64,000 nucleotides of DNA from IMGVR_UViG_3300046513_000221:1-64000, one strand, 5' to 3'. Shown: positions 10,788 through 55,176, counted from the stretch's first letter. Translations and numbers: made by a program. Notes: a model not told the origin generated them from the letters alone.

Positions 10788-10994
10788 TCATTTCTTTTTC
10801 TTTTCCCACAGACCCGTCTGCTCGTTCTTCTCGTAGCCAGACTTAACGGCGGTCCATGCCGTCTTGAAGCAGACGCTCTCATCGAGTTTCCGATCGTGAG
10901 CGGCGTTGAAAGCATGCATGAAGATCTCTTGAGCATGCTCCGGCAGAACGTGCTGGACGTTCGCCGGTAGGTCGTCGATACTATTGTAGGGCAT
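10788..10994 (-). CDS. chaB: ChaB family protein, 68 aa
   Basis: MPYNSIDDLP..V...LPEHAQEIFMHAFNAA...A(W)TAVKSGYEK...W matches the ChaB pattern; AAGGAG RBS. Confidence 0.85.
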   Translation of the reverse strand: MPYNSIDDLPANVQHVLPEHAQEIFMHAFNAAHDRKLDESVCFKTAWTAVKSGYEKNEQTGLWEKKKK

Positions 10995-11007
10995 GATACT
11001 CTCCTTG

Positions 11008-11862
11008 TTATGGAGTGAAATCAAAGACCTTCGAAGCACAGTAGCGCAGTTCACGCACGAAGGCCGCTTCTGCCGCCGTTCTCACGGACGGTGATTCCAG
11101 GCGCAACTGATTGCAGATACGGGCCGTCTGCCGGAGACGTCCGTAGGCCCAGCGACTCACCACCGCCACCGAGTCGTAGTGGCCCTTCAAGGCACGGATG
11201 CAGTTCTTCCGTACGGCGTCATCCAAGGTAGGACTCTGACGATGGACGGAGTTGAGGTACTTCACCATGAACTGCTGGAGCTGTACCTCGTTCAAGCTGC
11301 TCTGCTCCGGAGTGGCCTGAATGATGATCGACTGCGCCAGAGCGGAGCCGAAGTCAACGTCCAGATCGTCGGGATGACTGATGTATGTGTCACCGCCGTC
11401 CTTGGCGAACAGCACCGCGTAGAAGATGTCCGGCAGGTCATCTTCCTTGGCGATCGGGAATGGAATAACCTTGACGGCCATGCTACGCAGGTGGTCGTTG
11501 AAGGTCTGGATGCCGGTGTAGACCTCCCGGTCGTTCTCGTCCATCCCGCGCATCATGTCAGCGAACTTGCTGATGAACTCCCGACGATACGCCGGAATGA
11601 TGGCGATCGAGGAGAAGCTGAAACCGCAGTCCTCGCGGATGAAGCTCACCAGATCTTCGAAGCTCGAACCCATCTCAGGGTTGGAGCTGTTGAAAGCCAG
11701 CACATCGCAGGACATCGCGAACGCCAGCAGCTGGTTGTATTGGATGATCTCCTGATCCGGAGTCGCCAGCACGAACGGATACGACGACGGCTGCACCCCC
11801 GGATGGAAGATGAAGCTCTCGCCGAAGGGTACCATGTAGTACTCTTGGTCTTTGTCAGACAT
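11008..11862 (-). CDS. hypothetical protein, 284 aa
   Basis: Start moved to MSDKDQEY (AGGAAAG RBS). Confidence 0.7.
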   Translation of the reverse strand: MSDKDQEYYMVPFGESFIFHPGVQPSSYPFVLATPDQEIIQYNQLLAFAMSCDVLAFNSSNPEMGSSFEDLVSFIREDCGFSFSSIAIIPAYRREFISKFADMMRGMDENDREVYTGIQTFNDHLRSMAVKVIPFPIAKEDDLPDIFYAVLFAKDGGDTYISHPDDLDVDFGSALAQSIIIQATPEQSSLNEVQLQQFMVKYLNSVHRQSPTLDDAVRKNCIRALKGHYDSVAVVSRWAYGRLRQTARICNQLRLESPSVRTAAEAAFVRELRYCASKVFDFTP

Positions 11863-12196: not shown

Positions 12197-12518
12197 GCTT
12201 GCGGTCTCCCAGCTGTTGGATCATACAACCAAGTCGTCCGAGATCGCACAGGCGACGGTAGACGTACTCCTTGAAGGCAGTGATGCCGAGGTCGGTGATG
12301 CGCCAGTGAGGGATCACCATGCCACTGAACTCTGCATGGTCGAACTCGCCTTCCACGATGAACTTGTTGTCGATCAGACGATAGATCTCGATCGGCGTAC
12401 CGCTCACATCCCGCGTCGGGTTATGAGTCTGGTGCGTGGAGCCAATGTCGCTGACGATCTGCTCCATCACCACGAAATCGGCATCGGTCAGCTTGACGCT
12501 GCGGTCGGTGTTAGCCAT
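12186..12518 (-). CDS. hypothetical protein, 110 aa
   Basis: ORF in array. Confidence 0.65.
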   Translation of the reverse strand: MANTDRSVKLTDADFVVMEQIVSDIGSTHQTHNPTRDVSGTPIEIYRLIDNKFIVEGEFDHAEFSGMVIPHWRITDLGITAFKEYVYRRLCDLGRLGCMIQQLGDRKHVS

Positions 12519-12531
12519 GATACTCTTTCTT

Positions 12532-13389
12532 TTAATCGTTCGAAGTTTCCTTACCGATTTCGCTGTCTTTACCCTGACGGAGCGAAGCCTCGGCGATCAC
12601 CAGCACGGCCTTCAGCTCATCCAGCGTATACTCGCCGTCGAGCCATACGCGACCGCCCTTGCCGGGGCTGACGTACGGCAGACCGGACTTGCAGATGGAG
12701 CCACCGCCGTTGGAGCGCTCGCGGAACTCCTCCTTGGCCTGAGACAGCGACATCGACTTGCCGAGGCAGAAGGTGTGCTCGGTGTCCATGTTGAAGCCCG
12801 GTTGACCGATGCCGGTCAGCATTGGGATGCCCACGAAGTCGCCCGGCTGAGGGATGTTCATGTCCTTGAACACATCATCCCACGTACCGCCCTGAAATTT
12901 GAGAGGCGGATGCTTGTAGGCTTGACCGGGATCGGTTGCCAGTTTGTCAACGATGGGAGTACCGGCGAAGTCTGCCGGGTCGAAGTCCAGCAGCTTGATC
13001 TTGTGAGGGTACATGAAGTTGATGCTCAGGTCGCCGACCGGCGAAGCCTGACTGTCCGGCACGATCTCGAAGCCGTTCTCGCGCTCCATGCGATCGAAGA
13101 TGTGGCGTGCATCCGGTTCATTCTCCGCGTGGCAGAAGAGATCGGTGTACTGACTACGGGTCACCTTGTGCGGACGGCGCTCGATCTGCTCGGTGGAGAT
13201 GACCACTTCGAGATCCTTGTTAACGCGGCTTTCGCTGATGCTCTTCTGGAGAGCACCTTGGATGTCCTGCGGACGGATGTGGGTGGTGTAACCCTTACCT
13301 TTGAGAAGGATGTCGATGACGTGCGCTACTTGCTGACGATTCGAACCTTCGCCGGAGGTCACATGGACGTGTACTTTTTCTTTTTGCAT
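12532..13389 (-). CDS. hypothetical protein, 285 aa
   Basis: Start moved to MQKEKVHV (AAGGGG RBS). Confidence 0.65.
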   Translation of the reverse strand: MQKEKVHVHVTSGEGSNRQQVAHVIDILLKGKGYTTHIRPQDIQGALQKSISESRVNKDLEVVISTEQIERRPHKVTRSQYTDLFCHAENEPDARHIFDRMERENGFEIVPDSQASPVGDLSINFMYPHKIKLLDFDPADFAGTPIVDKLATDPGQAYKHPPLKFQGGTWDDVFKDMNIPQPGDFVGIPMLTGIGQPGFNMDTEHTFCLGKSMSLSQAKEEFRERSNGGGSICKSGLPYVSPGKGGRVWLDGEYTLDELKAVLVIAEASLRQGKDSEIGKETSND

Positions 13390-13401
13390 TTCGATCCCCT
13401 T

Positions 13402-13433
13402 AAAAAAAGTTGGACGGGCGAACCCGCCCAACT
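13402..13433 (-). terminator. intrinsic terminator (UUCG loop)
   Basis: Minus strand AGTTGGGCGGG-TTCG-CCCGTCCAACT followed by TTTTTT, directly after the mini-pilin stop. Confidence 0.8.
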
Positions 13434-13437
13434 GGTA

Positions 13438-13575
13438 TTACATGAAGCTGGTGATCAGGTTCTTGATCATCGGCCAGAATTTTTCAACCGCGATGGTGCC
13501 GACGATGCCAATGATGGCGAGGACGACGAGCAGTTCGATCAGCGTGAAGCCGTCGTTATTAGGACGCTGCAGCAT
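13438..13575 (-). CDS. 45-aa type IV pilin-like microprotein (class III signal peptide plus alpha1 helix only)
   Basis: MLQRPNNDG|FTLIELLVVLAIIGIVGTIAVEKFWPMIKNLITSFM; G-1/F+1/E+5/G+14 pilin signature; AAGGAGG RBS; terminator downstream. Absent from the ORF track. Confidence 0.85.
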   Translation of the reverse strand: MLQRPNNDGFTLIELLVVLAIIGIVGTIAVEKFWPMIKNLITSFM

Positions 13576-14083
13576 CGGAAGCCTCCTTCTTGTTGCTCTC
13601 GACGATCACGGTGGTGATGTTGTAGCCGAAAGCAGCCAGTGGTTGCAGGAACAGACGGAAGCCAGCCTCGTTGCGCTGAGGATTATCGTCCAGGAACTCG
13701 ACTTCAATCGATTCCAGACCGAGCGCGGCAACCAGCTTGTCGGTTTCAGCCTTCAGACCGAAAATGGAAATCCATGCCTTGAAGGAGTCGATTCCGGTCG
13801 AGTGCTGACCGATCTCTTCCATGCTTCCCGGACGGGTGGTTTGCTCGTTGTGCAGGATGTCGCCGATCGCCTTAATCGCATCGGTGACATCCTTGGAGAT
13901 TTCCTTCTCCGATACCACGCCGGACGTGACCAGCTTGTGGATACCGTACCACAGCATCGAGGTCAGGTACGAGTGTACCTTGTACACGGAGTCCGAGACC
14001 GGTACCTCGCGGTCGAAGATGGAAGTCAGAGCGAAATGCTCCGGGGTGCCCAGACGGATCTGGAGCTTTTGAATCAGAGTCAT
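13559..14083 (-). CDS. hypothetical protein, 174 aa
   Basis: ORF with AAGGAAAC RBS; stop overlaps the pilin gene start. Confidence 0.65.
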   Translation of the reverse strand: MTLIQKLQIRLGTPEHFALTSIFDREVPVSDSVYKVHSYLTSMLWYGIHKLVTSGVVSEKEISKDVTDAIKAIGDILHNEQTTRPGSMEEIGQHSTGIDSFKAWISIFGLKAETDKLVAALGLESIEVEFLDDNPQRNEAGFRLFLQPLAAFGYNITTVIVESNKKEASDAAAS

Positions 14084-14110
14084 GCGTGTTTCCTTGGCGA
14101 ATTGATAATA

Positions 14111-14134
14111 CCCTAGACCTGCAAAGGTCTAGGG
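14111..14134. terminator. terminator-like hairpin
   Basis: CCCTAGACC-tgcaaa-GGTCTAGGG after the SPFH stop. Confidence 0.6.
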
Positions 14135-14144
14135 CGATTTACTT

Positions 14145-15557
14145 TTAGGCAGCTGCCTTGTCGGTGTTGCCACCGATGCGGGACATGACGTTGTCCAGCA
14201 GAGCCTTGCCTTCGGTGGTGCCGCCCAGAGCGGTGACCATGCTGCCGATGGCGCTACCGCCCTTACCGGAGAACATGTCCATCAGGTTGTTGACACCGCC
14301 CTTGATGTCGCCGCCGTTCGCCACGACGGTCATCTTGGCATGGCCCATTGCAGCAGCCATTGCGATGCCAACTTCCTTGTTTGCCGCGACCTGCTCGATG
14401 CTGATCAGGTAGGTCTGGTAGCCCTCGTCGGAGCCGATCTTCTCGGCCAGCGCGATCTGCGCTTCGACAGGAGCCATCAGCGACGCTTTCTGAGCAGCCG
14501 CTTCGGCGGTACCCTTGGCAGTGATACCTTCAGCGTTCTTCAGTGTTGCCTGCAGTTCACCGTCGGCGCGCAGGGTGGCGGCTTCTTTCTCAGCCGTCGC
14601 ATTGGTAACGCGAACCGACTTCTCGGCTTCGGCGTTCACGGTGGCGACTTCCTTGTTTTGAGCTGCCACGATCACTGCGGTCGCCTTGTTGATCTCGGCC
14701 TTCTTGACGGCGTTGACCGACTCGACGGCCATGTTGGCTTCGGCGGTGTTCTTGGCTTCAGCTGCGATACGCTGTTCGGCTTTTTGCTGCTCGATACCGA
14801 TGTCCTGCTGGGTGGTAGCGGAGCGCATACCGACCTCGCGATCCATGTCCTGCTTCGACAGGGCGATGGCGCGGGACTTCTCGATCTCAGCGGTCTCAGC
14901 GGTCTGCTGATTGGCGGCGATGGCTACGCGGGACTCGCGGTCGATGCGCGACTGTTCCTTGCGCATGATGTTGGCGATCACGTTCGAGCCGGGAGCATCG
15001 CGCAGATCCATGAACTCGATGGTCTTCACGGTGGTTACGCCCCACTCCTTCAGCTGCGCCAGTACCTCTTCGGTGAACTGCGAACCCAGCGACGAACGGG
15101 CTTCCATGATCTCTTCCAGAGTGTTGGTCGCCAGAATGCGACGAACAGCACCTTGGATGATCTGCTTCAGTTGGCTGCGCAAATCTTCAACGGAGGTCAC
15201 GCGCTGCGCAGCCAAGTTCGACTGATCGATACGGAAGAAAGCCGCGACGTCAACAACGAACGGCAGACGAGCGGAGTCGTACGCCTCGTAGTCTTTCAGA
15301 TCGATGGTGAAGTTCGATTCCGGCAGCTTGATCACGGTCAGGCCGACGACAGGGATCCAGCTCGGCCACGCGTAGTAGACGTTACCGGAGTCCTTGCTGT
15401 TGCGACCGTACGAGGTCGCGCCCAACTTGTTCTGGACAATGTGGACCATGTTGGTCGGTACGACGACGCGCAGGTTCAGCGCCCACTTGACGGTGAACAG
15501 CGCGATGATTGCCAGAATGATGACTGCGACCAAAATTACGATACCCAGAATTTCCAT
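14145..15557 (-). CDS. SPFH/band-7 flotillin-like membrane protein, 470 aa
   Basis: N-terminal TM, SPFH core (VVDVAAFFRI...AVRRILAT..LEEI...F..EV..QLKEWGV), Ala/Glu-rich flotillin coiled coil. Confidence 0.85.
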   Translation of the reverse strand: MEILGIVILVAVIILAIIALFTVKWALNLRVVVPTNMVHIVQNKLGATSYGRNSKDSGNVYYAWPSWIPVVGLTVIKLPESNFTIDLKDYEAYDSARLPFVVDVAAFFRIDQSNLAAQRVTSVEDLRSQLKQIIQGAVRRILATNTLEEIMEARSSLGSQFTEEVLAQLKEWGVTTVKTIEFMDLRDAPGSNVIANIMRKEQSRIDRESRVAIAANQQTAETAEIEKSRAIALSKQDMDREVGMRSATTQQDIGIEQQKAEQRIAAEAKNTAEANMAVESVNAVKKAEINKATAVIVAAQNKEVATVNAEAEKSVRVTNATAEKEAATLRADGELQATLKNAEGITAKGTAEAAAQKASLMAPVEAQIALAEKIGSDEGYQTYLISIEQVAANKEVGIAMAAAMGHAKMTVVANGGDIKGGVNNLMDMFSGKGGSAIGSMVTALGGTTEGKALLDNVMSRIGGNTDKAAA

Positions 15558-35427: not shown

Positions 35428-36873
35428 TTAGTGTACGTTCTTCGGATCTTCGAAGAACATGTCCTTCACGTTCGTGCAGAACGGCACGATGGTACCGCTC
35501 AAGCCCGGATCACCGGACGAGGACGCATTCAGCGACAGGTTGCCGAGGAACGACTCGTGGATGCTGCGGTACTTGACCAGAACGTTACCACCGTTCGCAC
35601 CGAGGGACTGAGCGCCACGCGCCGACCACTTCAGTGCCACGTTGAACAGGTTCAGCGTGTTGGTGATGTTGGAGTAGCGCAGCAGCTCGTTGGTGATCAG
35701 GCGCTTGACGAGGAACATCGCGCCGATGTTGCTGAACACCGTCTCCAGACGCTTCATGTCGATGTTGCGGCTGTTCAGGATGCGGACGGTGATCTCGGAC
35801 CACTTGATCAGCAGCGGGAAGATCAGGTACTCGTACAGGCGCAGACGGCGCGTGTAGATGTTGAGGCTGTCCAGCTGGTGCAGCTCTTCGTAGTTCCATG
35901 CCATGTAGCGCACGACATCGAAGGTGCTCTGCTTACCGTCATCCGGCAGCTCGCGCAGGTTCTTCTTGGTACGCTCGTCGAGGATGCGCTCCAGCGACAT
36001 GATGGCCTTGTCTGCCTTCTCCAGCTTGGAGGTCGGCGAGGTCAGGATCTTACGACGCCAGAAGTCGCCGGACGCCAGACTAGTGGACTTCTTCACGTTC
36101 TCCAGCACATGATGCAGGGAAATCACGAGGTTGCGGAAGTTGGCATCGGACTGCAGACGCTCCTTGTTGACCACCATCGTCATGGTCTTGCTCGGATGGA
36201 AGTACTCGAAGTCGCTGTCCACCTCGACCTCTTGATCATTGAAGACGAACACGTCCTCATCCAGCTTCATCAGACGCATGGTCTCCTCGAAGCCGTACTT
36301 GATGAAGAAGTAGATGAAGAAGTTCTTGAATGCGTTGATGTTGTTCGAGCGGGTCTTGAAGAAGTCCAGCAGGAACACCTTACCGTTGTAGTCGGTGCCG
36401 CCGTTCGACTGGATGGTCGTCTGCTTGTGGCGAACGCCCAACGGCATCAGCAGCGTCTTCAGGAAGATACCATTGCGCACGTTGTAGAAGTTCTTGTCTG
36501 CAACCTGCAGGATCGCGTAGTAGCGGTTCCCGTTCAGGATGAAGAAGTAGTCGTCGACCAGCTTCGGGATGAACAGGTGCAGAGCGCGCTCCTTCTTCTC
36601 ACCCTCCCACTCGATCATGAACCGGGCCTCGATCAGGTCCAGACGCGATTCCTCGATCGAGATGGTCTGCTTCGAGATGTACTTGTGGCACTCCTCCTCG
36701 TTGATGCGCTTCATGTCGAGGAACTTGATGCCGGGGATCGAGTTCAGCGTCGAGAACAGGTCGCGGAAGTAGCTGTCGATGTCCTCGCGTTGACGGATGT
36801 AGATCAGGTCTTCATTGAACTTCTCCGGGTTGTCTGCCTGGAACTTCTTGTAGAATTGGGTTTGGATGTCCAT
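35428..36873 (-). CDS. rpoB: phage multisubunit RNA polymerase beta subunit, N-terminal half (AR9/phiKZ type, probably non-virion), 481 aa
   Basis: PKLVDDYFFILNGNRYYAILQ (beta region A) and YRSIHESFLG...DPGLSGTIVPF (beta region D). True start is MDIQTQ at 36873. Confidence 0.85.
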   Translation of the reverse strand: MDIQTQFYKKFQADNPEKFNEDLIYIRQREDIDSYFRDLFSTLNSIPGIKFLDMKRINEEECHKYISKQTISIEESRLDLIEARFMIEWEGEKKERALHLFIPKLVDDYFFILNGNRYYAILQVADKNFYNVRNGIFLKTLLMPLGVRHKQTTIQSNGGTDYNGKVFLLDFFKTRSNNINAFKNFFIYFFIKYGFEETMRLMKLDEDVFVFNDQEVEVDSDFEYFHPSKTMTMVVNKERLQSDANFRNLVISLHHVLENVKKSTSLASGDFWRRKILTSPTSKLEKADKAIMSLERILDERTKKNLRELPDDGKQSTFDVVRYMAWNYEELHQLDSLNIYTRRLRLYEYLIFPLLIKWSEITVRILNSRNIDMKRLETVFSNIGAMFLVKRLITNELLRYSNITNTLNLFNVALKWSARGAQSLGANGGNVLVKYRSIHESFLGNLSLNASSSGDPGLSGTIVPFCTNVKDMFFEDPKNVH

Positions 36874-36881
36874 GCTGCTCC

Positions 36882-37139
36882 TTAGCGAACGTTCTTGTAG
36901 GCTTCCAGAACTGCCGCCTTGACGACCTCCGGTGCTGCGGTGAAGTAGTCGGCAACCATCGCCACGGTCCACTTGGAGCCGTTGCGCGGTGCCGAGCCGG
37001 TCATGTAGAATGCCAGCTTGTCGGAGATGACGCGCCAATGACGTTCAGTGATCTCTTCCATCTTGAGGCCGAGAAACTCAGCGACTTCCTCTGCGTGGTA
37101 GATGTAGCTGTGGGTTACCAGCCCGGATACGATAGCCAT
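36882..37139 (-). CDS. hypothetical protein, 85 aa
   Basis: TAATG overlap. Confidence 0.65.
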   Translation of the reverse strand: MAIVSGLVTHSYIYHAEEVAEFLGLKMEEITERHWRVISDKLAFYMTGSAPRNGSKWTVAMVADYFTAAPEVVKAAVLEAYKNVR

Positions 37140-38739: not shown

Positions 38740-40308
38740 TTACTCCTTGGTGAGCATGTACAGTGCCAGACCACCCTCACGATGGATGCCCCGGATGAAG
38801 TTACCCTGAGTATCCATATAGTTCATCGGCGAGAACATGATCTTTTCCGCCTCGATGTTGGCCTCTGCGGAGAACAGACCTGCCACACGCATCGTGTCGC
38901 CGTCGTAGTCACCACCGAGACCCTTCATGTATGCGAAGTTCGGTACGTAGGTGTCGATCCACTGGATCTTGTCTTCGAGGATCGTGTTCTTACCATCGGT
39001 CGGGAAGAACGGGTAGTCCTTGAAGTTCTTGTTACCGGTTCCGCCCTCGCTCACCAGACCGGACACGTCCACGGTTTTCTCCGTGGTCAGGATCTTCACC
39101 CGGCAGGTGATGACGGACTCGGGACCAGTCACCGGGAAGCGGGTGGCGATTACGTGCTTGTCGCGGCACACGTCGATCGCGGCGTCGTACAGGAAGTCGG
39201 TCAGTGTGTAGTGGCGATCCGGCAGACCCTTGATACCCTCGATGTTTTTCATGATCGGAGTGCGATCACCGACGCCGTTCAGACGAAAGGCCTGAGTACG
39301 GATCCGCTTAGTCTTGTCCTTGATGTAGCCGTTCACGATCTTCTGGATGTTCGCGGACGAGATGGTCTCGTACACGGTGTCCTGTAGGTCGTAGCGTTCG
39401 TCACCCTCCAGTACGATCGATGCCGAGTGCTCGTACTCATGGAAGAAGTCTTCGATCCACTTGATGATGAACGGATAGAACAGGTTCAGTGCCAGATGGA
39501 GCGGTACCCCGAAGTAGTTGTATGGGATCTGCTGCGTCTCGGGGGTGTTGCTCTTGATCTGCGAGCAGGAGAGCACGCCGATGGTCGAGTAGTCGATGGA
39601 CTTACCCATGATGGCCTGACGGATCACGCCCTTCTTACCGGCGATCTTCTGAGTCAGTTCCTTATGGATCTCGACCAGCAGGTTCTGCACGGAGGATTGG
39701 GTGATGTAGCTGTTCTCGAAGATGATGGCCTCCGAGGTGGCGGCATTCAGGAGCTTGATGTACAGGGCGTTGACACCCTCCACAGTGATCTTCTTGGAGC
39801 CGGACTGACTGGAGAAGTTCACATCGCGGTAGTAGGCAGGGATGACCAGCCACTTGTCGAGGAAGATCTCATCGAACTTGAGCATGTTGAGCAGCTCGTC
39901 CTTCTTCTCGCGGCTAGCGTTGATAGTACCTTCCTTCACCCACTTGATCTTCTTCCAGTTCTTGACGAAGAAGTCGATGCCGCACTCACCCTGCTCCGGG
40001 TCGTCGGACACAACGAGGTTGCCGAACTGGTCGAGCCGGACGTACTTGTCACCAGCCAGAACGAGCGGCAGCGCACGAAACATCTGGAAGATGGTGATGT
40101 ACACCATCGGGTGAAAGAACTTACGACGGAGATCGATAAAGCCGAAGTTGTTCTTACGCTCTTCCGAGCCGAACTTACCGAAGATCTTTGTCGAGAACAG
40201 ACCGTCCTCGCTTGGGAGTCCATCCGATCCGAGATAGAAGCGGTTGTTTACTTGCTCGCAGCCGTTCACACGGATGAACTCGTTCATGTTGAATGCGTCT
40301 AATTGCAT
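38740..40308 (-). CDS. rpoC: phage multisubunit RNA polymerase beta-prime subunit, N-terminal/catalytic half (probably virion RNAP), 522 aa
   Basis: SEDGLFSTKIFG, GFIDL, GKKGVIRQAIMGKSIDYS, RFP and catalytic GGDYDGD. Confidence 0.9.
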   Translation of the reverse strand: MQLDAFNMNEFIRVNGCEQVNNRFYLGSDGLPSEDGLFSTKIFGKFGSEERKNNFGFIDLRRKFFHPMVYITIFQMFRALPLVLAGDKYVRLDQFGNLVVSDDPEQGECGIDFFVKNWKKIKWVKEGTINASREKKDELLNMLKFDEIFLDKWLVIPAYYRDVNFSSQSGSKKITVEGVNALYIKLLNAATSEAIIFENSYITQSSVQNLLVEIHKELTQKIAGKKGVIRQAIMGKSIDYSTIGVLSCSQIKSNTPETQQIPYNYFGVPLHLALNLFYPFIIKWIEDFFHEYEHSASIVLEGDERYDLQDTVYETISSANIQKIVNGYIKDKTKRIRTQAFRLNGVGDRTPIMKNIEGIKGLPDRHYTLTDFLYDAAIDVCRDKHVIATRFPVTGPESVITCRVKILTTEKTVDVSGLVSEGGTGNKNFKDYPFFPTDGKNTILEDKIQWIDTYVPNFAYMKGLGGDYDGDTMRVAGLFSAEANIEAEKIMFSPMNYMDTQGNFIRGIHREGGLALYMLTKE

Positions 40309-44041: not shown

Positions 44042-44695
44042 TTACTGGAGGTCGTTCTTCACGGTGGCCGGTTTCTTGGCGGTCACCGACATGTCGGCGG
44101 CGTCGTGCGCCGCTGCCGCTTGAGGACGCAGCTGCAGGGTCTTCTCTTTGCCGGTGCGGAAGGTCTCTTCGGTATGGTCATCCTTCACGATCTTGTATTT
44201 GTCCAGATCGATGTGCGGATAGCCGCCGAAGCTCAAGAAGAACGAACGTGGTGCGGTGTTCAGACCGACTTCGTATGCACGCTTGACATCGATCAGACGG
44301 GTCTGAGCGTTCTTGAACTCGTCGCGACCAGCTTCGATCATGTTCATCAGCTTGCGGTACAGTTCGGTGTCCAACGTAGGATTTTGTTCCTTGATGGACA
44401 GGAATGCGGCGCGGCTACCGTCCGGGCCGTAGCGACCGGAGATCGATGCCTTCACCAGCTCGGCCATGTCGTTCTTGGCCATTTCCGGGATCTGCGTGCT
44501 GGTCATGACCTTTTGCGAGTAGTTCGCCAGAACGTTCTGGTTGTCCTCGTAAGCTGCTTTGATCAGGGCTTCCTGACGGTTGGCCCAGTTGCTCGCGGAG
44601 AAGTACGCGATGACCAGTGCGACCAGTGCGGCGACGATCACGCCGACGATGGCCAAGGCGATGATGCCAGCGCTACCTTGTTGATTCTTTTTCAT
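44042..44695 (-). CDS. lemA: LemA-like membrane protein, 217 aa
   Basis: N-terminal TM, then helical domain with KEQNPTL...LYRKLMNMIEAGRDEF...YE. Confidence 0.6.
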   Translation of the reverse strand: MKKNQQGSAGIIALAIVGVIVAALVALVIAYFSASNWANRQEALIKAAYEDNQNVLANYSQKVMTSTQIPEMAKNDMAELVKASISGRYGPDGSRAAFLSIKEQNPTLDTELYRKLMNMIEAGRDEFKNAQTRLIDVKRAYEVGLNTAPRSFFLSFGGYPHIDLDKYKIVKDDHTEETFRTGKEKTLQLRPQAAAAHDAADMSVTAKKPATVKNDLQ

Positions 44696-45849: not shown

Positions 45850-47535
45850 CTATGCCAGCAGCGCCTCCAGATCGACGATGACGTCGTTGACGTCAGGCAG
45901 ACCGAGGAGTTCCTTGCCGATTCGGATGATATCGTTCTCGGCGATGAGGCCGGGGATGATATCGTCGAGTTCCGGACGCTTGTCGCACATGATCTTGCCG
46001 ATCATGGTGTCCGCATCGATGTTACCTGCCAGAATGATCGATGGATACATGGACGATAAGTCCTCGTCCACAATATTCTCGAAGATGCGATTGGAGCGCT
46101 TGCCATCCTTGCTGATGACGATGCCGACGGCGTCCATCATCTCAGGCAGAGCCACGAATGCACCCTTGAACTTCTTCTTCTCTTCCTCTTCCTTCAGACG
46201 GTTGTGGTTGTTGGACAGGAGGAAACCCTCCTTCTCCAGAACCATCGCCGCGAAGTTACGGATCGAGGTGGTCTTGGTCATGACCTTGTTGAAGCGGGTC
46301 GCGGTCATCAGGCCCATGTTGTACAGCAGGTCGATGTCGTTGTTCTGCTCTTCGAGCTGATACAGACGGAACGAGTCATACATCGAGTACTTGAGGAAGC
46401 TCTCGTAGTTGATGTACATCGCGTCCGTGATCTCGCCCTCGTACTCATACTTACCTTCGATCCCCTCGTCGATCAGGATCGCATCCAGAGCGTACGATTC
46501 GCGCTTGCCCATCGTCGCCCGGATCTTGGCGAACTGCTCCTGCATCTCGACGAACTGCGAGTAACCTGCAACCTCCAGCTTGGTGTTCCGCTTGGTGAAG
46601 TCGGTTGCGAAGGAATCGTTCTCGATCCATGTGGACTTGTACGGCAGCTCCTTTGGACACATCACCTCTTCAGGCTTTAGCTTCAGTCGGAGCATACGGT
46701 TCTTCATGGTTACCAAGTCGAACCCGGCGTTCCAAGCACCCATGAAGTCGGGTTTGTCACGCTTCACGATCTTGAAGAAGTCCTTCAGCAGCTCCGCCTC
46801 ATCGTCGTAGATGTGTACCTCGATCGCACGCACCTTGGCGTAATCGATCTTGGAGTTTGGATCCTTCTCGTTCATCTCGTCGATGACCTGAGAGATCCAC
46901 TCATCGCCGTATTCTGCGAATGCTTCAAGGAAGTCCATCTGAGATTGGTTGTTCTCGTTCTTCAGGATGAACGAGTGGATGGTCATCGTCGGCTGGTGGA
47001 TGTACGAGATCATCGACACCGGACATGGAGCCAGCTCTGGTTCAGGAAACTCCCTGTACTCCGACACATCGACCTCAATATCGTAGAACGCCTTGGTGAT
47101 CGGCAGGACTGCGATCTGGTGACGGTTGCGGTCGAGCCACTCACGCGTCTTGTAGTCTGCCAGATCCATGTCCGTCAGGTGCAGGTTGTTGTCCTTGTGG
47201 AGGTTACGGAGTTCCTTCCACTTACCGTTGTTCTTACAAGCCTTGTAGAAGTCCATCTGGTCGGAGGCCTTAGCCATCTCATACTGCAGATTGTCGAACT
47301 TCACGGTTATCGGCTCGACCTTGTCGAACTCGATGTAATTCGCTGCCTTCTTCAGCCTGAACTCGTCCTTGGTAATGTAGAACGTGTAGGACGGATCCTC
47401 CTCGATCTCGAATTGCTTCTTGATCGTACCATCCGGTTGAAGTACGCTCTCCACATAGATGATCTTGGAGTGCTGGCGATTGTTGTCGTCACGATCGCGA
47501 ACGTGCAAGACGTTCGATAGCTGTTTTCCGCTCAT
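45850..47535 (-). CDS. polB: family B DNA polymerase, N-terminal subunit (3'-5' exonuclease plus palm motif A), 561 aa
   Basis: ExoI FYDIEVD, ExoII WNAGFD, ExoIII YSMYD, motif A DEDLSSMYPS. Lacks motifs B and C. Confidence 0.9.
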   Translation of the reverse strand: MSGKQLSNVLHVRDRDDNNRQHSKIIYVESVLQPDGTIKKQFEIEEDPSYTFYITKDEFRLKKAANYIEFDKVEPITVKFDNLQYEMAKASDQMDFYKACKNNGKWKELRNLHKDNNLHLTDMDLADYKTREWLDRNRHQIAVLPITKAFYDIEVDVSEYREFPEPELAPCPVSMISYIHQPTMTIHSFILKNENNQSQMDFLEAFAEYGDEWISQVIDEMNEKDPNSKIDYAKVRAIEVHIYDDEAELLKDFFKIVKRDKPDFMGAWNAGFDLVTMKNRMLRLKLKPEEVMCPKELPYKSTWIENDSFATDFTKRNTKLEVAGYSQFVEMQEQFAKIRATMGKRESYALDAILIDEGIEGKYEYEGEITDAMYINYESFLKYSMYDSFRLYQLEEQNNDIDLLYNMGLMTATRFNKVMTKTTSIRNFAAMVLEKEGFLLSNNHNRLKEEEEKKKFKGAFVALPEMMDAVGIVISKDGKRSNRIFENIVDEDLSSMYPSIILAGNIDADTMIGKIMCDKRPELDDIIPGLIAENDIIRIGKELLGLPDVNDVIVDLEALLA

Positions 47536-49979: not shown

Positions 49980-51563
49980 ATGTCTATCAGCTACGATACC
50001 GTCCACCAAAGCACCGTGGGCAGCAAAGTCTCCGCCATTCTGGAAAAACTGCCAGCGATCAACGAATCGTTCGCAGCAGAAGGCCTGAACGTCCTGAACG
50101 AAGGTTTCTCGGAAGTTGCTGCTAACAAGCACTACTACGAAGACTACGTCACCAAGCTGAGCGAAGGTCTGGACCCGGTAGCTGCCGCCCAGTTCCAATC
50201 GCTGGCCGACACCACCCGTACCCAGATCCTGCAAGAAAGCTCGATCTCGGGCATCAACCCGATCACCGCACTGGCGCTGCCGATGCTGCGCGTGGCATGG
50301 CCAAAAACCTCGATCCGCGAAGGCTTCCCGACCGAACCGGTCATGCAGCCGAAGTTCAAGGTGACCTGGCTGAAGCCGTACTTCATCGACGCTTCGACCA
50401 ACGAAAAGATCTTCATGCCTGCTGGCATCAGCAAGCGTAAAGACCTGTTCAAGCTGAAAATGCTGCAGGAAACCCCAATTCTGGTCGGCGCTGCCGGTCT
50501 GAACGGCTACGACCTGCTGACCCCTGTCGGCGCGAACGCATCGCTGGGCGACGAAATCGATCCGAACTTCTCGATCAGCGGCGTGACCTTCAAGGCACTG
50601 GACGCAACCGGCGCTAACCCGGTCAACGTCACCGTGGACGTCGAGTTCGAACTGGACACCAACATCGACGTGATCGAAGGCACCGCCTCCGGCAAGCACA
50701 CCGATGGTACCGACAACAAAGTTCGCGTGTTCGCGAAACTGAACCGTCGTGACGGCCAGATGGACGTCGTCGGTCTGGGCCGCGAAGTCGTCAGCGTAAC
50801 CGTCAAGGGCTACCTGTCGTCCGAAGCCAACAACCGCGCTACCCAAGTCGGTTTCGACGTTACGTCGGACGAGACCGTCATCGGTACCGGCCAACCGATC
50901 GAATCGCCGATCAACATCCAGCAGATGACCGACACGATGGCGATGTACAACATCGACTCGACCGTCAAGACGCTGGAAATCATGTCCACCGCGCTGGCAC
51001 AATCGACCGATCTGGAAGGCATCGACTTCCTGGAGCGTCGCTTCATGCTGGGCCTGAAACTGCAGACCGAGTTCGACGTGAACCCACCTGCCAACTTCCA
51101 GCTGGGCAACACCGCATGGCGCGAAGAGATCAAGATCAAGATCGACAATCTCGTGACCCGTCTGATGCAGTCCACCAACATCACCGCTGGCTCGGTCGTG
51201 ATCTTCGGCAACCCGCTGGACACGCAGATCCTGTCGAACGTGAAGTGGATGTACTCCGGCGAAGACCAGCCTAACGGCGTCAACATCGAGTACCGCGTCG
51301 GTAACTACACCTCCGGCGTGACGAACTACAAGGTTCTGTCGTCGTTCAACTTCGGTCAAGGCGAGCTGTACGTCGCGTTCCTGCCATCCACCCCGGATCA
51401 GGCGACGCTGAAGTACTACCCGTACTCGTTCAACGTTGTGCGCGGCACCGCCTCGCCTAACCGCACGTTCAACCCTGCTGTTCAGATGATCAAACGCCAC
51501 GTCTTCAAGGAGTACTCCTCGATGGTCGGCAAGATCAAGATCAAGAACAACAACGGCCTGTAA
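49980..51563 (+). CDS. major capsid protein precursor, 527 aa
   Basis: Extreme codon bias, own late promoter and terminator, N-terminal propeptide ending ILQE|SS, and HK97-type segments (ALPMLRVAWP, QMTDTMAMYNID, GNPLD). Confidence 0.8.
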   Translation: MSISYDTVHQSTVGSKVSAILEKLPAINESFAAEGLNVLNEGFSEVAANKHYYEDYVTKLSEGLDPVAAAQFQSLADTTRTQILQESSISGINPITALALPMLRVAWPKTSIREGFPTEPVMQPKFKVTWLKPYFIDASTNEKIFMPAGISKRKDLFKLKMLQETPILVGAAGLNGYDLLTPVGANASLGDEIDPNFSISGVTFKALDATGANPVNVTVDVEFELDTNIDVIEGTASGKHTDGTDNKVRVFAKLNRRDGQMDVVGLGREVVSVTVKGYLSSEANNRATQVGFDVTSDETVIGTGQPIESPINIQQMTDTMAMYNIDSTVKTLEIMSTALAQSTDLEGIDFLERRFMLGLKLQTEFDVNPPANFQLGNTAWREEIKIKIDNLVTRLMQSTNITAGSVVIFGNPLDTQILSNVKWMYSGEDQPNGVNIEYRVGNYTSGVTNYKVLSSFNFGQGELYVAFLPSTPDQATLKYYPYSFNVVRGTASPNRTFNPAVQMIKRHVFKEYSSMVGKIKIKNNNGL

Positions 51564-53211: not shown

Positions 53212-55176
53212 ATGAGCGGAGTCTACCATGACAAATATTTCGAGACGCTGGAACGGCGTCTCAGCCTCGTCTGCGGCGAACTCAGCGACGAGGATCGTGC
53301 AAAGCTCCGGGAGCGCATCTGGGCGATGCGCAAGCCAATCGAACTGACGATCGAAAACAACTACAAAGACACATGGATCGATACCAACTCGGAAGAGATC
53401 CTCAACATCATCTACGACAAGAAGCCGAACATCTCCGGCTATGGCGTACTGTTCAACCACAAGCCGAACATCCCCGGTCGCGTTCTGGACTTCCTGCTGA
53501 AGGAACGTAAGGTCAAGAAGAACAAGATGTTCGACCACCTGAACGACGACGACAAGACCATGTACAACAAGCTGGACGTGGAGCAGAAGGTGCTCAAGGT
53601 TCTGGCGAATGCGTACTACGGTGCGTTCGGTCAGCGTTCGTTCCACTTCTTCAATCCGTTCCTTGGTCCATCAGTGACCTACACGGGTCAGCACATCATT
53701 CTGAGCGCGATTCTCGGCTTCGAATCGTTCATGTCGGACAACTTCGCGTTCTTCACGTTCGACCAGCTGCTGAAGTACGTGGACAACATCACTCAGGAGT
53801 TCGACGCCGAGCTGACGGCTCTGGACGAGAAGGTCACCGTCGAGCAGGTGTACGCTCGTCTGTCCGGCAAGTGCAACTTCGAGCTGACCGAGGAGCAGCA
53901 GATGGTGCTGGGCGGCGTCCTCGATGACATGCCTTACACCCAGCTGGAGCGTCTGTTCCTCAAGAACAACCTGTTCTTCCTGCTGCGTAACTCCACGGAG
54001 GTGCGTGACATCTTCGGTGAGTGCTTCAGTTCGGAATTCCTCGATCCAGACCATCCTCCGAAGGAGATCGCTGAGAACGTCGAGGCACTGAACGAGTACT
54101 TCAGCTACTTCGTCTCCTATCCGTACCAGTGGGACGACAAGTACGAGACTGCGCAGAATATCAAACGCAAAACCGTGCTGATCTCCGACACGGACTCCAC
54201 ATTCCTCAATATGGATCCTGCCGTCAAGTGGTACGAGGAAACGTTTGGTGTCAAGCTTGATAAAGTGGGCAAGATCAACGTCTGCAACATCATGGTATAC
54301 AACGTTACGAAGTTCATCGAGAAGGTGTTCTACCAGCTTACGACGAACCTGAACGTGAAGGAGAACATGCGTTCGAAGATCAATATGAAATCCGAGTTCA
54401 ACTTCTCCCGGATCATCTTGACTAAGAACAAGAAGCAGTATGCAGGTCAGATCGTTCTACAAGAAGGCAAGCTGCTCGGTAAGCCCAAGTTCGCGGTCGT
54501 CGGCCTGTCAATCAAGAAGGTCGGTACTCCTAAGATCGCTCGCAAGCGGTTCAATGACATTCTCGAAAAGGACATGTTGTTGGCCGACGTCATCGATCCG
54601 CTGGTACCGTTCATGAAGTTCATGGAGTTCGAGCGCGACATCAACAACTCGCTCCGGGCCGGTGAGTCGAGCTTCCTGAAACCGGCGCGCTTCACCGCTG
54701 AACGCGCCTACAAGAAGCCATTCACTCAGCAGACCGTTCGCGGCGTACGCCTCTGGAATGCTATCTTCCCCAACAGGAAGATCCCTAACTTCACCTCCGT
54801 CAATATGCTGAAGCTGCGTAAGTACTCGCTGCCGAAGTTCGAAGTGGACAAGGATGGCGAACCGGTAGAGAACGTCAACAAGGAAGTCGACATTCTGGAA
54901 TTCATGGAGGAGATTGCTAAGCTGAATCTCGCCGAGAATATTCTGGAGGGCATCGCCGAGTTCATCCAGACCCCGGAGATCGGCAACTACGGCATCGACG
55001 TGATCGCCATTCCGAAGGACATCGACCAGTTCCCGGAGGAGCTGGTTCCTCTGGCCGACATCAGTTCCATCATCAACGACAACATGAAGAATGGTAACAT
55101 CCTTCTGGAGTCCATTGGGTTCAAGGTAATCAAGAGCCTGAAGTACGATACGGTGAGTAACATCATCGAGATCTAA
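53212..55176 (+). CDS. polB: family B DNA polymerase, C-terminal subunit (fingers motif B, palm motif C, thumb), 654 aa
   Basis: QKVLKVLANAYYG (motif B), ISDTDS (motif C), KNKKQYAG and GLSIKK. Confidence 0.9.
   Translation: MSGVYHDKYFETLERRLSLVCGELSDEDRAKLRERIWAMRKPIELTIENNYKDTWIDTNSEEILNIIYDKKPNISGYGVLFNHKPNIPGRVLDFLLKERKVKKNKMFDHLNDDDKTMYNKLDVEQKVLKVLANAYYGAFGQRSFHFFNPFLGPSVTYTGQHIILSAILGFESFMSDNFAFFTFDQLLKYVDNITQEFDAELTALDEKVTVEQVYARLSGKCNFELTEEQQMVLGGVLDDMPYTQLERLFLKNNLFFLLRNSTEVRDIFGECFSSEFLDPDHPPKEIAENVEALNEYFSYFVSYPYQWDDKYETAQNIKRKTVLISDTDSTFLNMDPAVKWYEETFGVKLDKVGKINVCNIMVYNVTKFIEKVFYQLTTNLNVKENMRSKINMKSEFNFSRIILTKNKKQYAGQIVLQEGKLLGKPKFAVVGLSIKKVGTPKIARKRFNDILEKDMLLADVIDPLVPFMKFMEFERDINNSLRAGESSFLKPARFTAERAYKKPFTQQTVRGVRLWNAIFPNRKIPNFTSVNMLKLRKYSLPKFEVDKDGEPVENVNKEVDILEFMEEIAKLNLAENILEGIAEFIQTPEIGNYGIDVIAIPKDIDQFPEELVPLADISSIINDNMKNGNILLESIGFKVIKSLKYDTVSNIIEI

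What the first reader, a model, noticed from the sequence alone, without database searches (positions are those of the whole stretch)
13402..13575. Hidden 45-aa type IV pilin mimic: candidate pilus poison or superinfection-exclusion factor
Seen: MLQRPNNDG|FTLIELLVVLAIIGIVGTIAVEKFWPMIKNLITSFM has a strong AAGGAGG RBS and its own terminator and is missed by the ORF track. It carries the class III signal (G-1, F+1, E+5, G+14) and matches the pilin alpha1 helix to about residue 21, but has no globular head. Established: PilD cleaves and methylates this motif, and the alpha1 helix drives pilus and T2SS pseudopilus assembly. Inference: a headless pilin could enter and cap or jam the pilus, or titrate PilD, blocking pilus-dependent competitor phages, twitching, DNA uptake or type II secretion. 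Full-length prophage minor-pilin mimics are a recalled precedent; a headless version in a lytic jumbo phage appears unusual.
Basis: partly seen in the sequence, partly recalled or inferred. Interest (0 to 1): 0.85.

Follow-up and report, generated by a model that had tools for sequence, protein, structure and literature searches.

The report
Headless pilin-like peptide in jumbo phage
A jumbo phage carries a real, conserved 45-residue gene that encodes only the membrane helix of a bacterial type IV pilin; many phages carry such truncated pilin look-alikes, and this one probably tampers with the host's pilus or secretion machinery, though nobody has tested that.

Summary
It is a real gene. A diverged relative (dS about 0.6-0.75) keeps a 43-aa ortholog in the same cassette: SPFH/flotillin, then a 174-aa gene, then the peptide with the same 17-nt overlap, then the terminator.

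The gene is not hidden, because public pipelines call it and JGI names its 98%-identical variant as a prepilin-type domain protein. It is not unusual either. N_methyl-only or short-tailed pilin-like ORFs are annotated in T4-like, PhiW-14 and PAK_P1-like lytic phages. In my samples they are much commoner on viral contigs than in bacterial loci, and they nearly always keep E+5.

Function is untested. The best-supported mechanism is that a host prepilin peptidase trims the peptide to a 36-aa alpha1-N helix. That helix would mimic the host pilin inside the inner membrane and disturb a type IV filament system. The precedents are Caulobacter's 17-aa CIP peptide, PilA-PilS sensing and Pf4 PfsE. This is a new member of an annotated but uncharacterised kind, of moderate interest.

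The parts
13582..13588 (-). Shine-Dalgarno AAGGAGG, 6 nt upstream of the ATG. It is built from the N-K-K-E codons at the 3' end of the overlapping 174-aa gene.
   Evidence: Read from the sequence. The ortholog in L006 has AAGGAG with a 7-nt spacer. N-K-K-E is invariant in alignment A2.
13438..13575 (-). 45-aa prepilin-like ORF, TAA stop at 13438-13440 included
   Evidence: ORF list. Pfam and NCBIfam N_methyl above their cut-offs. GC3 0.80 in frame. The exact protein is called on 4 public contigs.
13549..13575 (-). Leader peptide, 9 codons ending in G-1: the predicted prepilin-peptidase cleavage site
   Evidence: Read from the sequence. The leader is also 9 aa in ortholog P0018, although only M1 and G9 are shared. 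Net leader charge is 0 here and +4 in P0018.
13441..13548 (-). Predicted mature peptide of 36 aa. It has F+1, E+5, G+14 and a 21-residue hydrophobic helix, followed by a 15-residue amphipathic tail with the conserved K23-x-W25-P26-x-I28-K29.
   Evidence: Alignment A3. Hydrophobicity and helical moment. AF2 models a single helix, residues 12-44, pLDDT 81.5.
13402..13433 (-). Intrinsic terminator: 11-bp stem, GNRA-like 4-nt loop, T-run
   Evidence: Folding energy -19.2 kcal/mol, z = -3.9. Nearly identical in L006.
13559..14083 (-). 174-aa gene whose last 17 nt overlap the peptide ORF, which suggests translational coupling. Function unknown.
   Evidence: The same 17-nt overlap occurs in L006. Only two relatives among 5.8 billion proteins. 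No Pfam, NCBIfam or PHROG hit. The Atlas model is poor.
14145..15557 (-). SPFH/flotillin-like membrane protein of 470 aa, first gene of the conserved cassette
   Evidence: Pfam Band_7, E 4e-17. 75% identical in L006. About 50% identical to flotillins of Brevundimonas, Ralstonia and Xanthomonas phages.
12532..13389 (-). Downstream 285-aa gene with its own start, 48 nt after the peptide's stop. It is not part of the peptide.
   Evidence: It lies in the same frame as the peptide, but L006 has two stops between the two genes. No hydrophobic N-terminus. The AF2 model is unusable, pLDDT 37.

Best explanation
This is a genuine small gene of a phiR1-37/AR9-like jumbo myovirus. It is transcribed with, and probably translationally coupled to, an SPFH/flotillin and 174-aa cassette. 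The 45-aa product would insert into the host inner membrane as a prepilin does. The host prepilin peptidase (PilD/GspO family) would cut it after G9 and N-methylate F+1. That leaves a 36-aa peptide consisting of the alpha1-N helix of a type IV pilin or pseudopilin plus a short interfacial tail, with no globular head. In the membrane it would act as a mimic of the host pilin's alpha1-N segment. It would occupy the partners that normally read that segment: the platform and alignment proteins (PilC, PilN/O or GspF, L/M), the growing filament, or pilin-sensing kinases of the PilS/PleC type. The result would be to shut down or derail a type IV filament system (type IV pilus, type II secretion pseudopilus or competence pilus) in the infected cell. 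The likely pay-off is exclusion of pilus-dependent competitor phages and a stop to pilus-based host behaviour. What is shown: the gene, its signals, the motif, the lack of a head, and its conservation. What is inferred: translation, peptidase processing, the target and the phenotype.
For: Gene reality: SD, terminator, coding GC3, a public gene call and a conserved short ortholog with the same overlap and terminator. Pilin-specific features, not just a transmembrane helix: N_methyl HMMs score well above their cut-offs. G-1, F+1..L+7 and E+5 are invariant across dS of about 0.6-0.75, while the leader sequence diverged but kept its 9-aa length. The best solved-structure matches are pilins, with Geobacter PilA-N at E 1e-13. 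Class level: with position +5 left free, 114 of 121 KGFT-type motif ORFs on viral contigs have E there, including 38 of 44 short ones; the exceptions look non-coding. A membrane-buried Glu would not be kept in a mere anchor. Short forms are enriched on viral contigs: 13/104 mature under 60 aa against 0/141 in bacterial loci, Fisher 9e-6. Mechanistic precedents: a 17-aa pilin helix suffices to bind PleC TM1, and as a synthetic peptide it lowers phiCbK susceptibility by 77% and attachment by 71%. PilA binds PilS within the membrane and switches it to its phosphatase state, by which pilins regulate their own expression (PMC7196804). PfsE, a 30-aa inner-membrane peptide, inhibits type IV pili via PilC (PMC8764522). 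Virus-encoded pilins are handled by host PilB/PilC (PMC12426801).
Against: There is no experimental or expression data for this or any other phage N_methyl-only peptide. The host is unknown, so the presence and type of its pilus or T2SS cannot be checked. Overall dN/dS is only about 0.58, the same as its uncharacterised neighbours. The window copy's leader has no net positive charge. The family has just three sequences. The conserved tail K-x-W-P-x-I-K has no counterpart in bacterial pilins, and SPFH genes recur next to such peptides. Both facts could point to a different membrane role. The sequence cannot say which partner is hit, or whether the target is T4P or T2SS.
Confidence: 0.45

Rival explanations
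1. Membrane-cassette partner. The peptide works with the phage SPFH/flotillin and the 174-aa protein to remodel or organise the host inner membrane, for example as a scaffolded microdomain or an envelope-level exclusion device. The prepilin-type segment would serve only as a peptidase-processed membrane anchor, not to target pili.
For: The cassette SPFH, 174 aa, peptide, terminator is conserved in two diverged genomes, with a 17-nt overlap. An unrelated T4-like lineage has an SPFH gene directly followed by a 75-aa pilin-like gene (Aes508_087/086; also GomatiRiver_11). RP13 has a 36-aa transmembrane peptide right after its flotillin.
Against: None of 120 viral loci with the motif has an SPFH gene nearby. 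X1, Domovoi and AG74 flotillins have no such neighbour. A generic anchor would not need an invariant G-1 and E+5. The RP13 peptide is not pilin-like.
Confidence: 0.2
2. Chain-terminating or destabilising subunit in the strict sense. The processed peptide is loaded by PilB/PilC into the growing pilus or pseudopilus, and because it has no head it caps, weakens or jams the fibre. It is a sub-case of the best explanation and is scored separately here.
For: E+5 and F+1, the residues used for subunit registration, are conserved. Naturally short pilins such as Geobacter PilA-N do assemble, and they are the closest solved matches. Host machinery assembles virus-encoded pilins.
Against: The mature peptide has only 36 residues and ends well before the alpha1-C region that packs in all solved pilins. 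The tail is amphipathic and Trp/Pro-containing, which suits the membrane interface. The two tested peptide precedents, CIP and PfsE, act inside the membrane without being incorporated.
Confidence: 0.15
3. Prepilin-peptidase decoy. The peptide titrates PilD/GspO, so that host prepilins and prepseudopilins stay unprocessed.
For: It has a complete class III signal. The strong SD suggests high expression.
Against: A cleavable substrate is turned over, so it is a poor inhibitor unless it is made in vast excess. The conserved E+5 and tail motif are not needed for cleavage, by established mutational work on pilins (my own knowledge, not checked here).
Confidence: 0.07
4. Decaying remnant of a captured host pilin gene, or a small membrane peptide with an unrelated role such as a lysis or holin-type function.
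For: The family is tiny. dN/dS is 0.58. A single-pass hydrophobic peptide is compatible with many membrane roles.
Against: Length, start, SD, overlap, motif and terminator are all kept across dS of about 0.6-0.75. The stop is followed at once by a terminator and the next gene, so no head-coding remnant exists. The tail is not the highly charged tail typical of holins. No lysis genes were recognised nearby.
Confidence: 0.1

Closest known systems
N-terminal domain of type IV pilins and type II secretion pseudopilins (Pfam PF07963 N_methyl; TIGR02532)
   Same: Short leader ending in Gly, F+1, E+5 and a hydrophobic helix of about 21 residues, with HMM scores well above the cut-offs. The nearest solved chains are pilins: Geobacter PilA-N at E 1e-13, then PilA, PilE and MshA.
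   Different: It stops after 36 mature residues, with no alpha1-C and no beta-sheet head. It is phage-encoded and lies outside any pilus or secretion gene cluster. Its tail motif K-x-W-P-x-I-K was not found in 212 bacterial relatives.
Short pilin-like ORFs already deposited in lytic phage genomes: Aeromonas phage PX29p038 (31 aa), Delftia phage PhiW-14 gp119 (44 aa), Pseudomonas phage vB_PaeM_G1 orf026 (59 aa, phrog_10597), Aeromonas phage Aes508_086 (75 aa, phrog_11263), Vibrio phage 1.081.O _058 (82 aa); also phrog_13280, 27437, 11596 and 3433 ('pilin')
   Same: The same architecture: a class III signal plus alpha1-N with little or nothing after it, in large virulent phages and among small genes of unknown function. 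In Aes508 the gene also sits next to an SPFH gene.
   Different: Only the N-terminal 23-33 residues align. The tails are unrelated, so this is a separate family of three sequences. None of these ORFs has a tested function.
CIP, the 17-residue N-terminal helix of Caulobacter PilA, and PilA-PilS intramembrane sensing in Pseudomonas aeruginosa
   Same: A headless pilin helix is enough to engage a sensor kinase's transmembrane segment and to reduce pilus function and pilus-phage susceptibility (PMC7196804).
   Different: CIP is a laboratory fragment of a host Flp-type pilin, not a viral gene. No kinase target is known here.
PfsE of filamentous phage Pf4 (also Tip of D3112 and Aqs1 of DMS3)
   Same: Small phage proteins that switch off type IV pili and give superinfection exclusion. 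PfsE is a 30-aa inner-membrane peptide with essential aromatic residues that binds PilC (PMC8764522; PMC12035536).
   Different: PfsE has no prepilin signal and no pilin similarity, and its motif is YxWGW. Tip and Aqs1 are soluble PilB binders. All come from temperate or chronic phages.
Naturally short pilins: Geobacter PilA-N (61 aa mature, 'geopilin domain 1') and Flp/Tad pilins
   Same: They show that pilins with little or no head exist and can be assembled. PilA-N is the best solved match, and its leader also begins M-L-Q.
   Different: PilA-N keeps the whole alpha1 helix and pairs with PilA-C, encoded by the next gene. Here the next gene has no signal sequence and is separated by a terminator. 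Flp pilins carry the G/xxxxEY motif and Pfam Flp_Fap, neither of which is found here.
Virus-encoded full-length pilins (archaeal pleolipovirus SNJ2 PilA1-2; cyanophage S-CAM7 'pilin'; Acinetobacter phage Acibel004 PilE-like)
   Same: Viral genes with class III signals that depend on host peptidase and assembly machinery (PMC12426801).
   Different: Those keep a head domain of 100 aa or more. In SNJ2 they build functional pili rather than blocking them.

Membership tests
Prepilin-type N-terminal cleavage/methylation domain (PF07963 / TIGR02532) | Profile score above the curated cut-off | tested here: met
   40.4 bits against 21.2 (Pfam) and 37.8 against 16.3 (NCBIfam)
Prepilin-type N-terminal cleavage/methylation domain (PF07963 / TIGR02532) | Gly at -1, hydrophobic residue (Phe) at +1, Glu at +5, then about 20 hydrophobic residues | tested here: met
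   Read from window:13438-13575:-. Invariant in ortholog P0018.
Prepilin-type N-terminal cleavage/methylation domain (PF07963 / TIGR02532) | Short, positively charged leader | tested here: inconclusive
   The leader is 9 aa in both orthologs, but its net charge is 0 in the window copy and +4 in P0018.
Prepilin-type N-terminal cleavage/methylation domain (PF07963 / TIGR02532) | Actual cleavage and N-methylation by a PilD/GspO-family peptidase | not testable with these tools
   Needs expression in wild-type and pilD-mutant hosts, plus mass spectrometry.
Complete type IV pilin / type II pseudopilin subunit | Full alpha1 helix (about 53 residues) packed on a C-terminal beta-sheet globular domain | tested here: not met
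   The mature peptide has 36 residues and is modelled as a single helix, 12-44. The stop is followed by a terminator and another gene.
Complete type IV pilin / type II pseudopilin subunit | Encoded with pilus or secretion assembly genes | tested here: not met
   The neighbours are an SPFH gene and phage ORFans. There is no other N_methyl ORF in the window.
Flp/Tad (type IVc) pilins | Flp motif G/xxxxEY and a Pfam Flp_Fap match | tested here: not met
   E+5 is followed by Leu. Flp_Fap is not among the Pfam hits at E up to 1.
Geobacter-type split pilin (PilA-N plus PilA-C) | A short pilin of about 61 residues whose head is supplied by the adjacent exported gene product | tested here: inconclusive
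   PilA-N is the best PDB match. However, the peptide is 25 residues shorter, the next gene has no hydrophobic N-terminus and follows a terminator, and its structure model is unusable, pLDDT 37.
PfsE-type superinfection-exclusion peptides | An inner-membrane peptide of about 30 aa with a YxWGW motif that binds PilC | tested here: not met
   There is no YxWGW motif; the tail motif here is K-x-W-P-x-I-K. PilC binding cannot be tested here (describes the family).
PHROG families of short phage pilin-like proteins (10597, 13280, 11263) | Match over the full profile length | tested here: not met
   Only profile positions 2-28 of 59-72 align, E 3e-6 to 3e-5. True members give E 1e-40 to 1e-44 over the full length.

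The most novel reading that the evidence does not exclude
Head-less prepilin peptides (alpha1-N only, E+5 retained) form a widespread, phage-enriched class of intramembrane mimics. Virulent phages, including jumbo and T4-like ones, would use them to switch off or reprogram host type IV filament machines (pili, type II secretion, competence). They would act by impersonating the membrane pool of pilin towards platform proteins or pilin-sensing kinases. The window's peptide, with its own conserved K-x-W-P-x-I-K tail and its SPFH-linked cassette, would be one lineage-specific version.
Probability: 0.35. Interest if true: 0.8.

Novelty: new member of a known kind. Interest (0 to 1): 0.55.

Why it matters
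If the mechanism holds, this would be a minimal, genetically encoded inhibitor or modulator of type IV pili or type II secretion. Those machines drive adhesion, twitching, DNA uptake, secretion and the adsorption of many phages. It would also give a function to a whole set of small 'hypothetical' phage genes that have sat in GenBank since about 2010. It would add a receptor-shutdown strategy to virulent phages; so far this is documented mainly for temperate and filamentous Pseudomonas phages (Tip, Aqs1, PfsE). Finally, it would give natural sequence templates for pilin-helix peptides of the CIP type. If the mechanism fails, the gene is still a useful caution: an N_methyl hit in a phage does not mean the phage encodes a pilin.

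Tried and rejected
1. **Stop-codon read-through or fusion with the downstream gene.** The two ORFs share a frame in the window and in L006, but L006 has two stops between them, and each gene has its own SD and start. Rejected.

2. **Head supplied in trans by the 285-aa neighbour (Geobacter-style split pilin).** The neighbour has no signal sequence and a terminator lies between the genes. The AF2 model of the neighbour was too poor to compare folds, pLDDT 37. Unlikely, but not formally excluded.

3. **Pseudogene remnant.** Rejected on conservation of length, overlap, SD and terminator.

4. **General SPFH linkage of phage pilin-like genes.** 0 of 120 loci had an SPFH gene nearby. The link is seen in only two lineages.

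5. **A common partner protein upstream of short pilin-like genes.** The 174-aa protein is unrelated to vB_PaeM_G1 orf027 and to the L007 169-aa protein.

6. **Function of the 174-aa partner.** No family, only two relatives, and a low-confidence Atlas model.

7. **More relatives of the cassette.** IMG/VR and JGI metagenome scans returned only the source contig or nothing.

8. **Host inference and T4P-versus-T2SS assignment.** Bacterial matches are scattered over many phyla and cover only the N-terminus. NCBIfam equivalog scores do not discriminate.

9. **Unusual nucleotide conservation of the terminator / next-gene junction.** It is high (0.95) but not an outlier along the cassette.

10. **Literature on phage N_methyl peptides or on dominant-negative truncated pilins.** Nothing directly relevant was found. 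Kilmury and Burrows 2016 is not held in the library.

Full report
**The observation**

- AAGGAGG sits at 13582-13588, 6 nt before the ATG.
- Four nucleotides after the TAA stop lies an 11-bp stem (7 G-C pairs) with a 4-nt loop and a T-run, at 13433-13402.
- The hairpin folds at -19.2 kcal/mol, z = -3.9, and none of 200 shuffles folds as well.
- Pfam N_methyl scores 40.4 bits against a gathering score of 21.2 (E 1.8e-10). TIGR02532 scores 37.8 against 16.3.
- G-1, F+1, E+5 and G+14 are read directly. The profile match ends near mature residue 21.
- A relaxed regular-expression scan of all six frames of the 64 kb gives one other match (GLSVLELV, + strand near 44300, inside a 263-codon ORF) that has no F+1 and was not followed up. 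This is the only G-F-T-L-I-E-L-type motif, so the match is not a multiple-testing accident.
- GC3 in frame is 0.80, like the flanking genes at 0.71-0.77.
- AlphaFold2 on the three-sequence alignment gives one uninterrupted helix, residues 12-44, mean pLDDT 81.5. There is no head.

**Is it a gene?**

The exact protein is already in the public protein collection. It was called on four contigs from three JGI samples and one SRA run. JGI names a 98% variant 'prepilin-type N-terminal cleavage/methylation domain-containing protein'. That strain differs in the ORF by three synonymous changes and one Ile-to-Val change.

An exhaustive HMMER pass over 1.84 billion representatives found one further true relative, P0018, 43 aa. 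Its 3.6-kb contig (L006) carries the same cassette:
- an SPFH protein (468 aa, 75% identical);
- a 174-aa protein (52% identical);
- the peptide, starting 17 nt inside the 174-aa gene exactly as in the window;
- a nearly identical terminator hairpin;
- the same downstream gene.

Synonymous divergence between the two cassettes is about 0.6-0.75. Across that distance the leader kept only M1 and G9, but it kept its length of 9 aa. G-1 and mature residues 1-7 are invariant, as is a tail motif K23-x-W25-P26-x-I28-K29.

The SD is formed by the codons N-K-K-E of the 174-aa gene. Those residues are invariant in an otherwise variable C-terminus. Overall dN/dS of the peptide is about 0.58, the same as the neighbouring ORFans and weaker than the SPFH gene at 0.27. 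I conclude that the gene is real and genuinely short.

**Alternatives for the anatomy**

- **Read-through.** The peptide ORF and the next gene (ATG at 13389) are in the same frame, separated by one TAA and 15 sense codons that contain the terminator. That invites a read-through idea. In L006 the frame is again shared, but two stops intervene, and the next gene has its own SD and start in both genomes. Read-through or fusion is therefore rejected.
- **Split pilin.** A Geobacter-style split pilin, with the head supplied by the next gene, is unlikely. The 285-aa product has no hydrophobic N-terminus and follows a terminator. Its AF2 model (pLDDT 37) was too poor for a fold comparison.

**Genome context**

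The window is the first 64 kb of a 263,413-bp IMG/VR contig.
- PHROG hits include a split multisubunit RNA polymerase beta subunit, two DNA polymerase pieces, a major head protein and a tail sheath.
- The head protein is 46% identical to that of Yersinia phage phiR1-37 and 36% identical to Bacillus phages AR9 and PBS1.
- There is no nucleotide-level match in GenBank phages.

So this is a new phiR1-37/AR9-like jumbo myovirus. 'Lytic' is an inference from those relatives. The host is unknown: GC is 51-60%, and there are no tRNAs.

**The peptide belongs to a larger, neglected class**

A tblastn of the 45 aa finds weak N-terminal matches in 137 GenBank phage records. The annotated genes under them are often very short:

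| Phage gene | Length | Note |
|---|---|---|
| PX29p038 | 31 aa | note: 'similar to N-terminal part of fimbrial protein (pilin)' |
| PhiW-14 gp119 | 44 aa | |
| vB_PaeM_G1 orf026 | 59 aa | |
| phi-Grn1_0145 | 67 aa | |
| Aes508_086 | 75 aa | |
| Vibrio 1.081.O _058 | 82 aa | |
| S-CAM7, Acibel004 | 100-107 aa | longer forms |

Six PHROG families share the N-terminus. One is labelled 'pilin' and five are of unknown function. The length comparison between viral and bacterial samples is as follows.
- **Viral contigs.** In the first 120 IMG/VR loci returned for a G-F-T-L-I-E-L-type pattern, 13 of 104 complete ORFs have a mature part under 60 aa, and 39 have one under 100 aa.
- **Bacterial loci.** In 141 complete motif ORFs from 80 bacterial loci the numbers are 0 and 2, Fisher 9e-6 and 8e-15.
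- **Caveat.** The two samples were drawn differently, so this is an indication and not a census.
- **E+5 retention.** With position +5 left free in the search pattern, 114 of 121 viral motif ORFs have Glu there, including 38 of 44 short ones. The seven exceptions look like non-coding matches. A membrane-buried Glu is not what a plain anchor would keep.
- **Atlas.** The ESM Atlas also holds clusters of 39-44-aa N_methyl-only proteins with 53-256 members.

Another 47-aa example (P0030) sits in a RusA-containing phage-like contig, between a membrane protein and a lipoprotein.

**Relation to cellular pilins**

The best solved-structure matches are the naturally short Geobacter PilA-N pilins (E 1e-13), whose leader also begins M-L-Q. 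PilA, PilE and MshA follow at E 1e-9 to 1e-5.

A scan of 185,579 species genomes gave 212 relatives, scattered over many phyla. All matched only in the N-terminal 25-38 residues, and none has the tail motif. NCBIfam equivalog models (PilA, GspH, PpdD, ComGC, GspG) score 20-32 bits on the N-terminus only and do not discriminate. The targeted machine therefore cannot be named, and no donor or host can be inferred.

**Mechanism**

Two points rest on my own knowledge of the field and were not tested here. Class III signals are cut after G-1 and N-methylated by PilD-family peptidases. The alpha1-N helix holds pilins in the inner membrane and forms the core contacts of the fibre.

- **CIP and PilS.** The 17-residue N-terminal helix of Caulobacter PilA is sufficient to bind TM1 of the kinase PleC. 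As a synthetic peptide it lowers phiCbK susceptibility by 77% and attachment by 71%. The same paper cites intramembrane PilA-PilS binding in P. aeruginosa, which switches PilS to its phosphatase state, the route by which pilins regulate their own expression (PMC7196804; reference listed in PMC6058289).
- **PfsE.** Pf4 PfsE, a 30-aa inner-membrane peptide with essential aromatic residues, blocks pilus extension through PilC and excludes pilus-dependent phages (PMC8764522).
- **Tip and Aqs1.** These act on PilB (PMC12035536).
- **SNJ2.** Host PilB/PilC machinery assembles virus-encoded pilins in the archaeal virus SNJ2 (PMC12426801).

Putting these together, the most likely mechanism is as follows. 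The peptide is inserted in the membrane, trimmed to a 36-aa alpha1-N mimic, and engages whatever reads that helix: platform or alignment proteins, the fibre, or a pilin-sensing kinase. The result is fewer or non-functional pili or pseudopili in the infected cell. I put this at 0.45. Within it, I lean to an intramembrane action rather than true incorporation, because the peptide ends before alpha1-C and has an amphipathic, Trp/Pro-containing interfacial tail.

**Rivals**

- **SPFH cassette role (0.2).** It is supported by the conserved cassette and by an independent SPFH-then-pilin-like adjacency in Aes508-type T4-like phages. It is weakened by 0 of 120 other loci having an SPFH gene nearby and by the retention of G-1 and E+5.
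- **Strict poison subunit (0.15).**
- **Peptidase decoy (0.07).**
- **Remnant or unrelated membrane role (0.1).**

**Novelty and score**

The architecture is already present and annotated in deposited phage genomes and in PHROGs, so this is a new member (a three-sequence family with its own tail and cassette) of a known but functionally unexplored kind. I found no paper that tests any such phage peptide.

The class-level pattern is a good, directly testable lead: phage enrichment of truncated forms with E+5 kept. Interest is 0.55.

**Limits**

There are no expression data and no host. Only two independent sequences of the family exist. The neighbours could not be interpreted.

Noticed in passing
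window 14145-15557 (-); L014 515-1728; L137 797-2228: A phage SPFH/flotillin gene heads the cassette that ends with the peptide. An unrelated T4-like lineage (Aeromonas phages Aes508 and GomatiRiver_11) also has an SPFH gene directly followed by a short pilin-like gene and a lipoprotein. The link is absent from 120 other viral loci carrying the motif.
   Followed up: partly
L001 5363-5473 (Ralstonia phage RP13 ORF244): A 36-aa hydrophobic peptide with no pilin motif lies immediately after RP13's flotillin homolog. This hints that phage flotillins may often pair with a small membrane peptide.
   Followed up: no
window 13389-13440 (-) and L006 2979-3038: The peptide ORF and the next gene share a reading frame in both genomes, but L006 has two stops between them. 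The terminator and the first 45 nt of the next gene are about 95% identical between genomes whose coding regions average 69%; other 40-nt windows in the cassette are equally conserved.
   Followed up: yes
window 13576-13590 (-): The peptide's Shine-Dalgarno is encoded by the N-K-K-E codons of the overlapping 174-aa gene. Those four residues are invariant in an otherwise variable C-terminal tail, which suggests a dual constraint.
   Followed up: partly
window 35428-37038 (-), 38740-40308 (-), 45850-47535 (-), 49980-51563 (+), 53212-55176 (+), 58416-60878 (+), 61918-63705 (-): Core genes of a phiR1-37/AR9-like jumbo phage: a polymerase-like protein, a split RNA polymerase beta subunit, two separate DNA polymerase pieces on opposite strands, a major head protein (46% identical to phiR1-37), a virion protein and a tail sheath. 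There is no nucleotide-level match in GenBank phages.
   Followed up: partly
window about 10788-11054 (-): A small ORF whose counterpart on L139 and L140 carries Pfam ChaB (PF06150), a domain that is uncommon in phages.
   Followed up: no
window 12436-13617 (+) and 13442-14116 (+): Long ORFs (393 and 224 aa) on the opposite strand cover the peptide locus. They are shadow ORFs typical of GC-rich coding DNA: GC3 is high only in the minus-strand frames.
   Followed up: partly
L007 130-1299 (ENA metagenome contig with a RusA-like gene): A 47-aa N_methyl-only ORF (P0030) abuts a 169-aa membrane protein upstream and a 171-aa lipoprotein downstream. This is a different phage context for a headless pilin-like peptide.
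   Followed up: no
L140 3104-3898 compared with window 12532-13389: The gene downstream of the peptide is 264 aa in one otherwise near-identical strain and 285 aa in the window, with 81% identity over the alignment. It appears to evolve fast.
   Followed up: no
L053, L125, L045, L096, L113 (IMG/VR loci): Further complete N_methyl-only ORFs of 28-45 aa, several on viral contigs of 150-220 kb. Half of the twelve shortest forms in the sample lie on contigs over 90 kb.
   Followed up: partly
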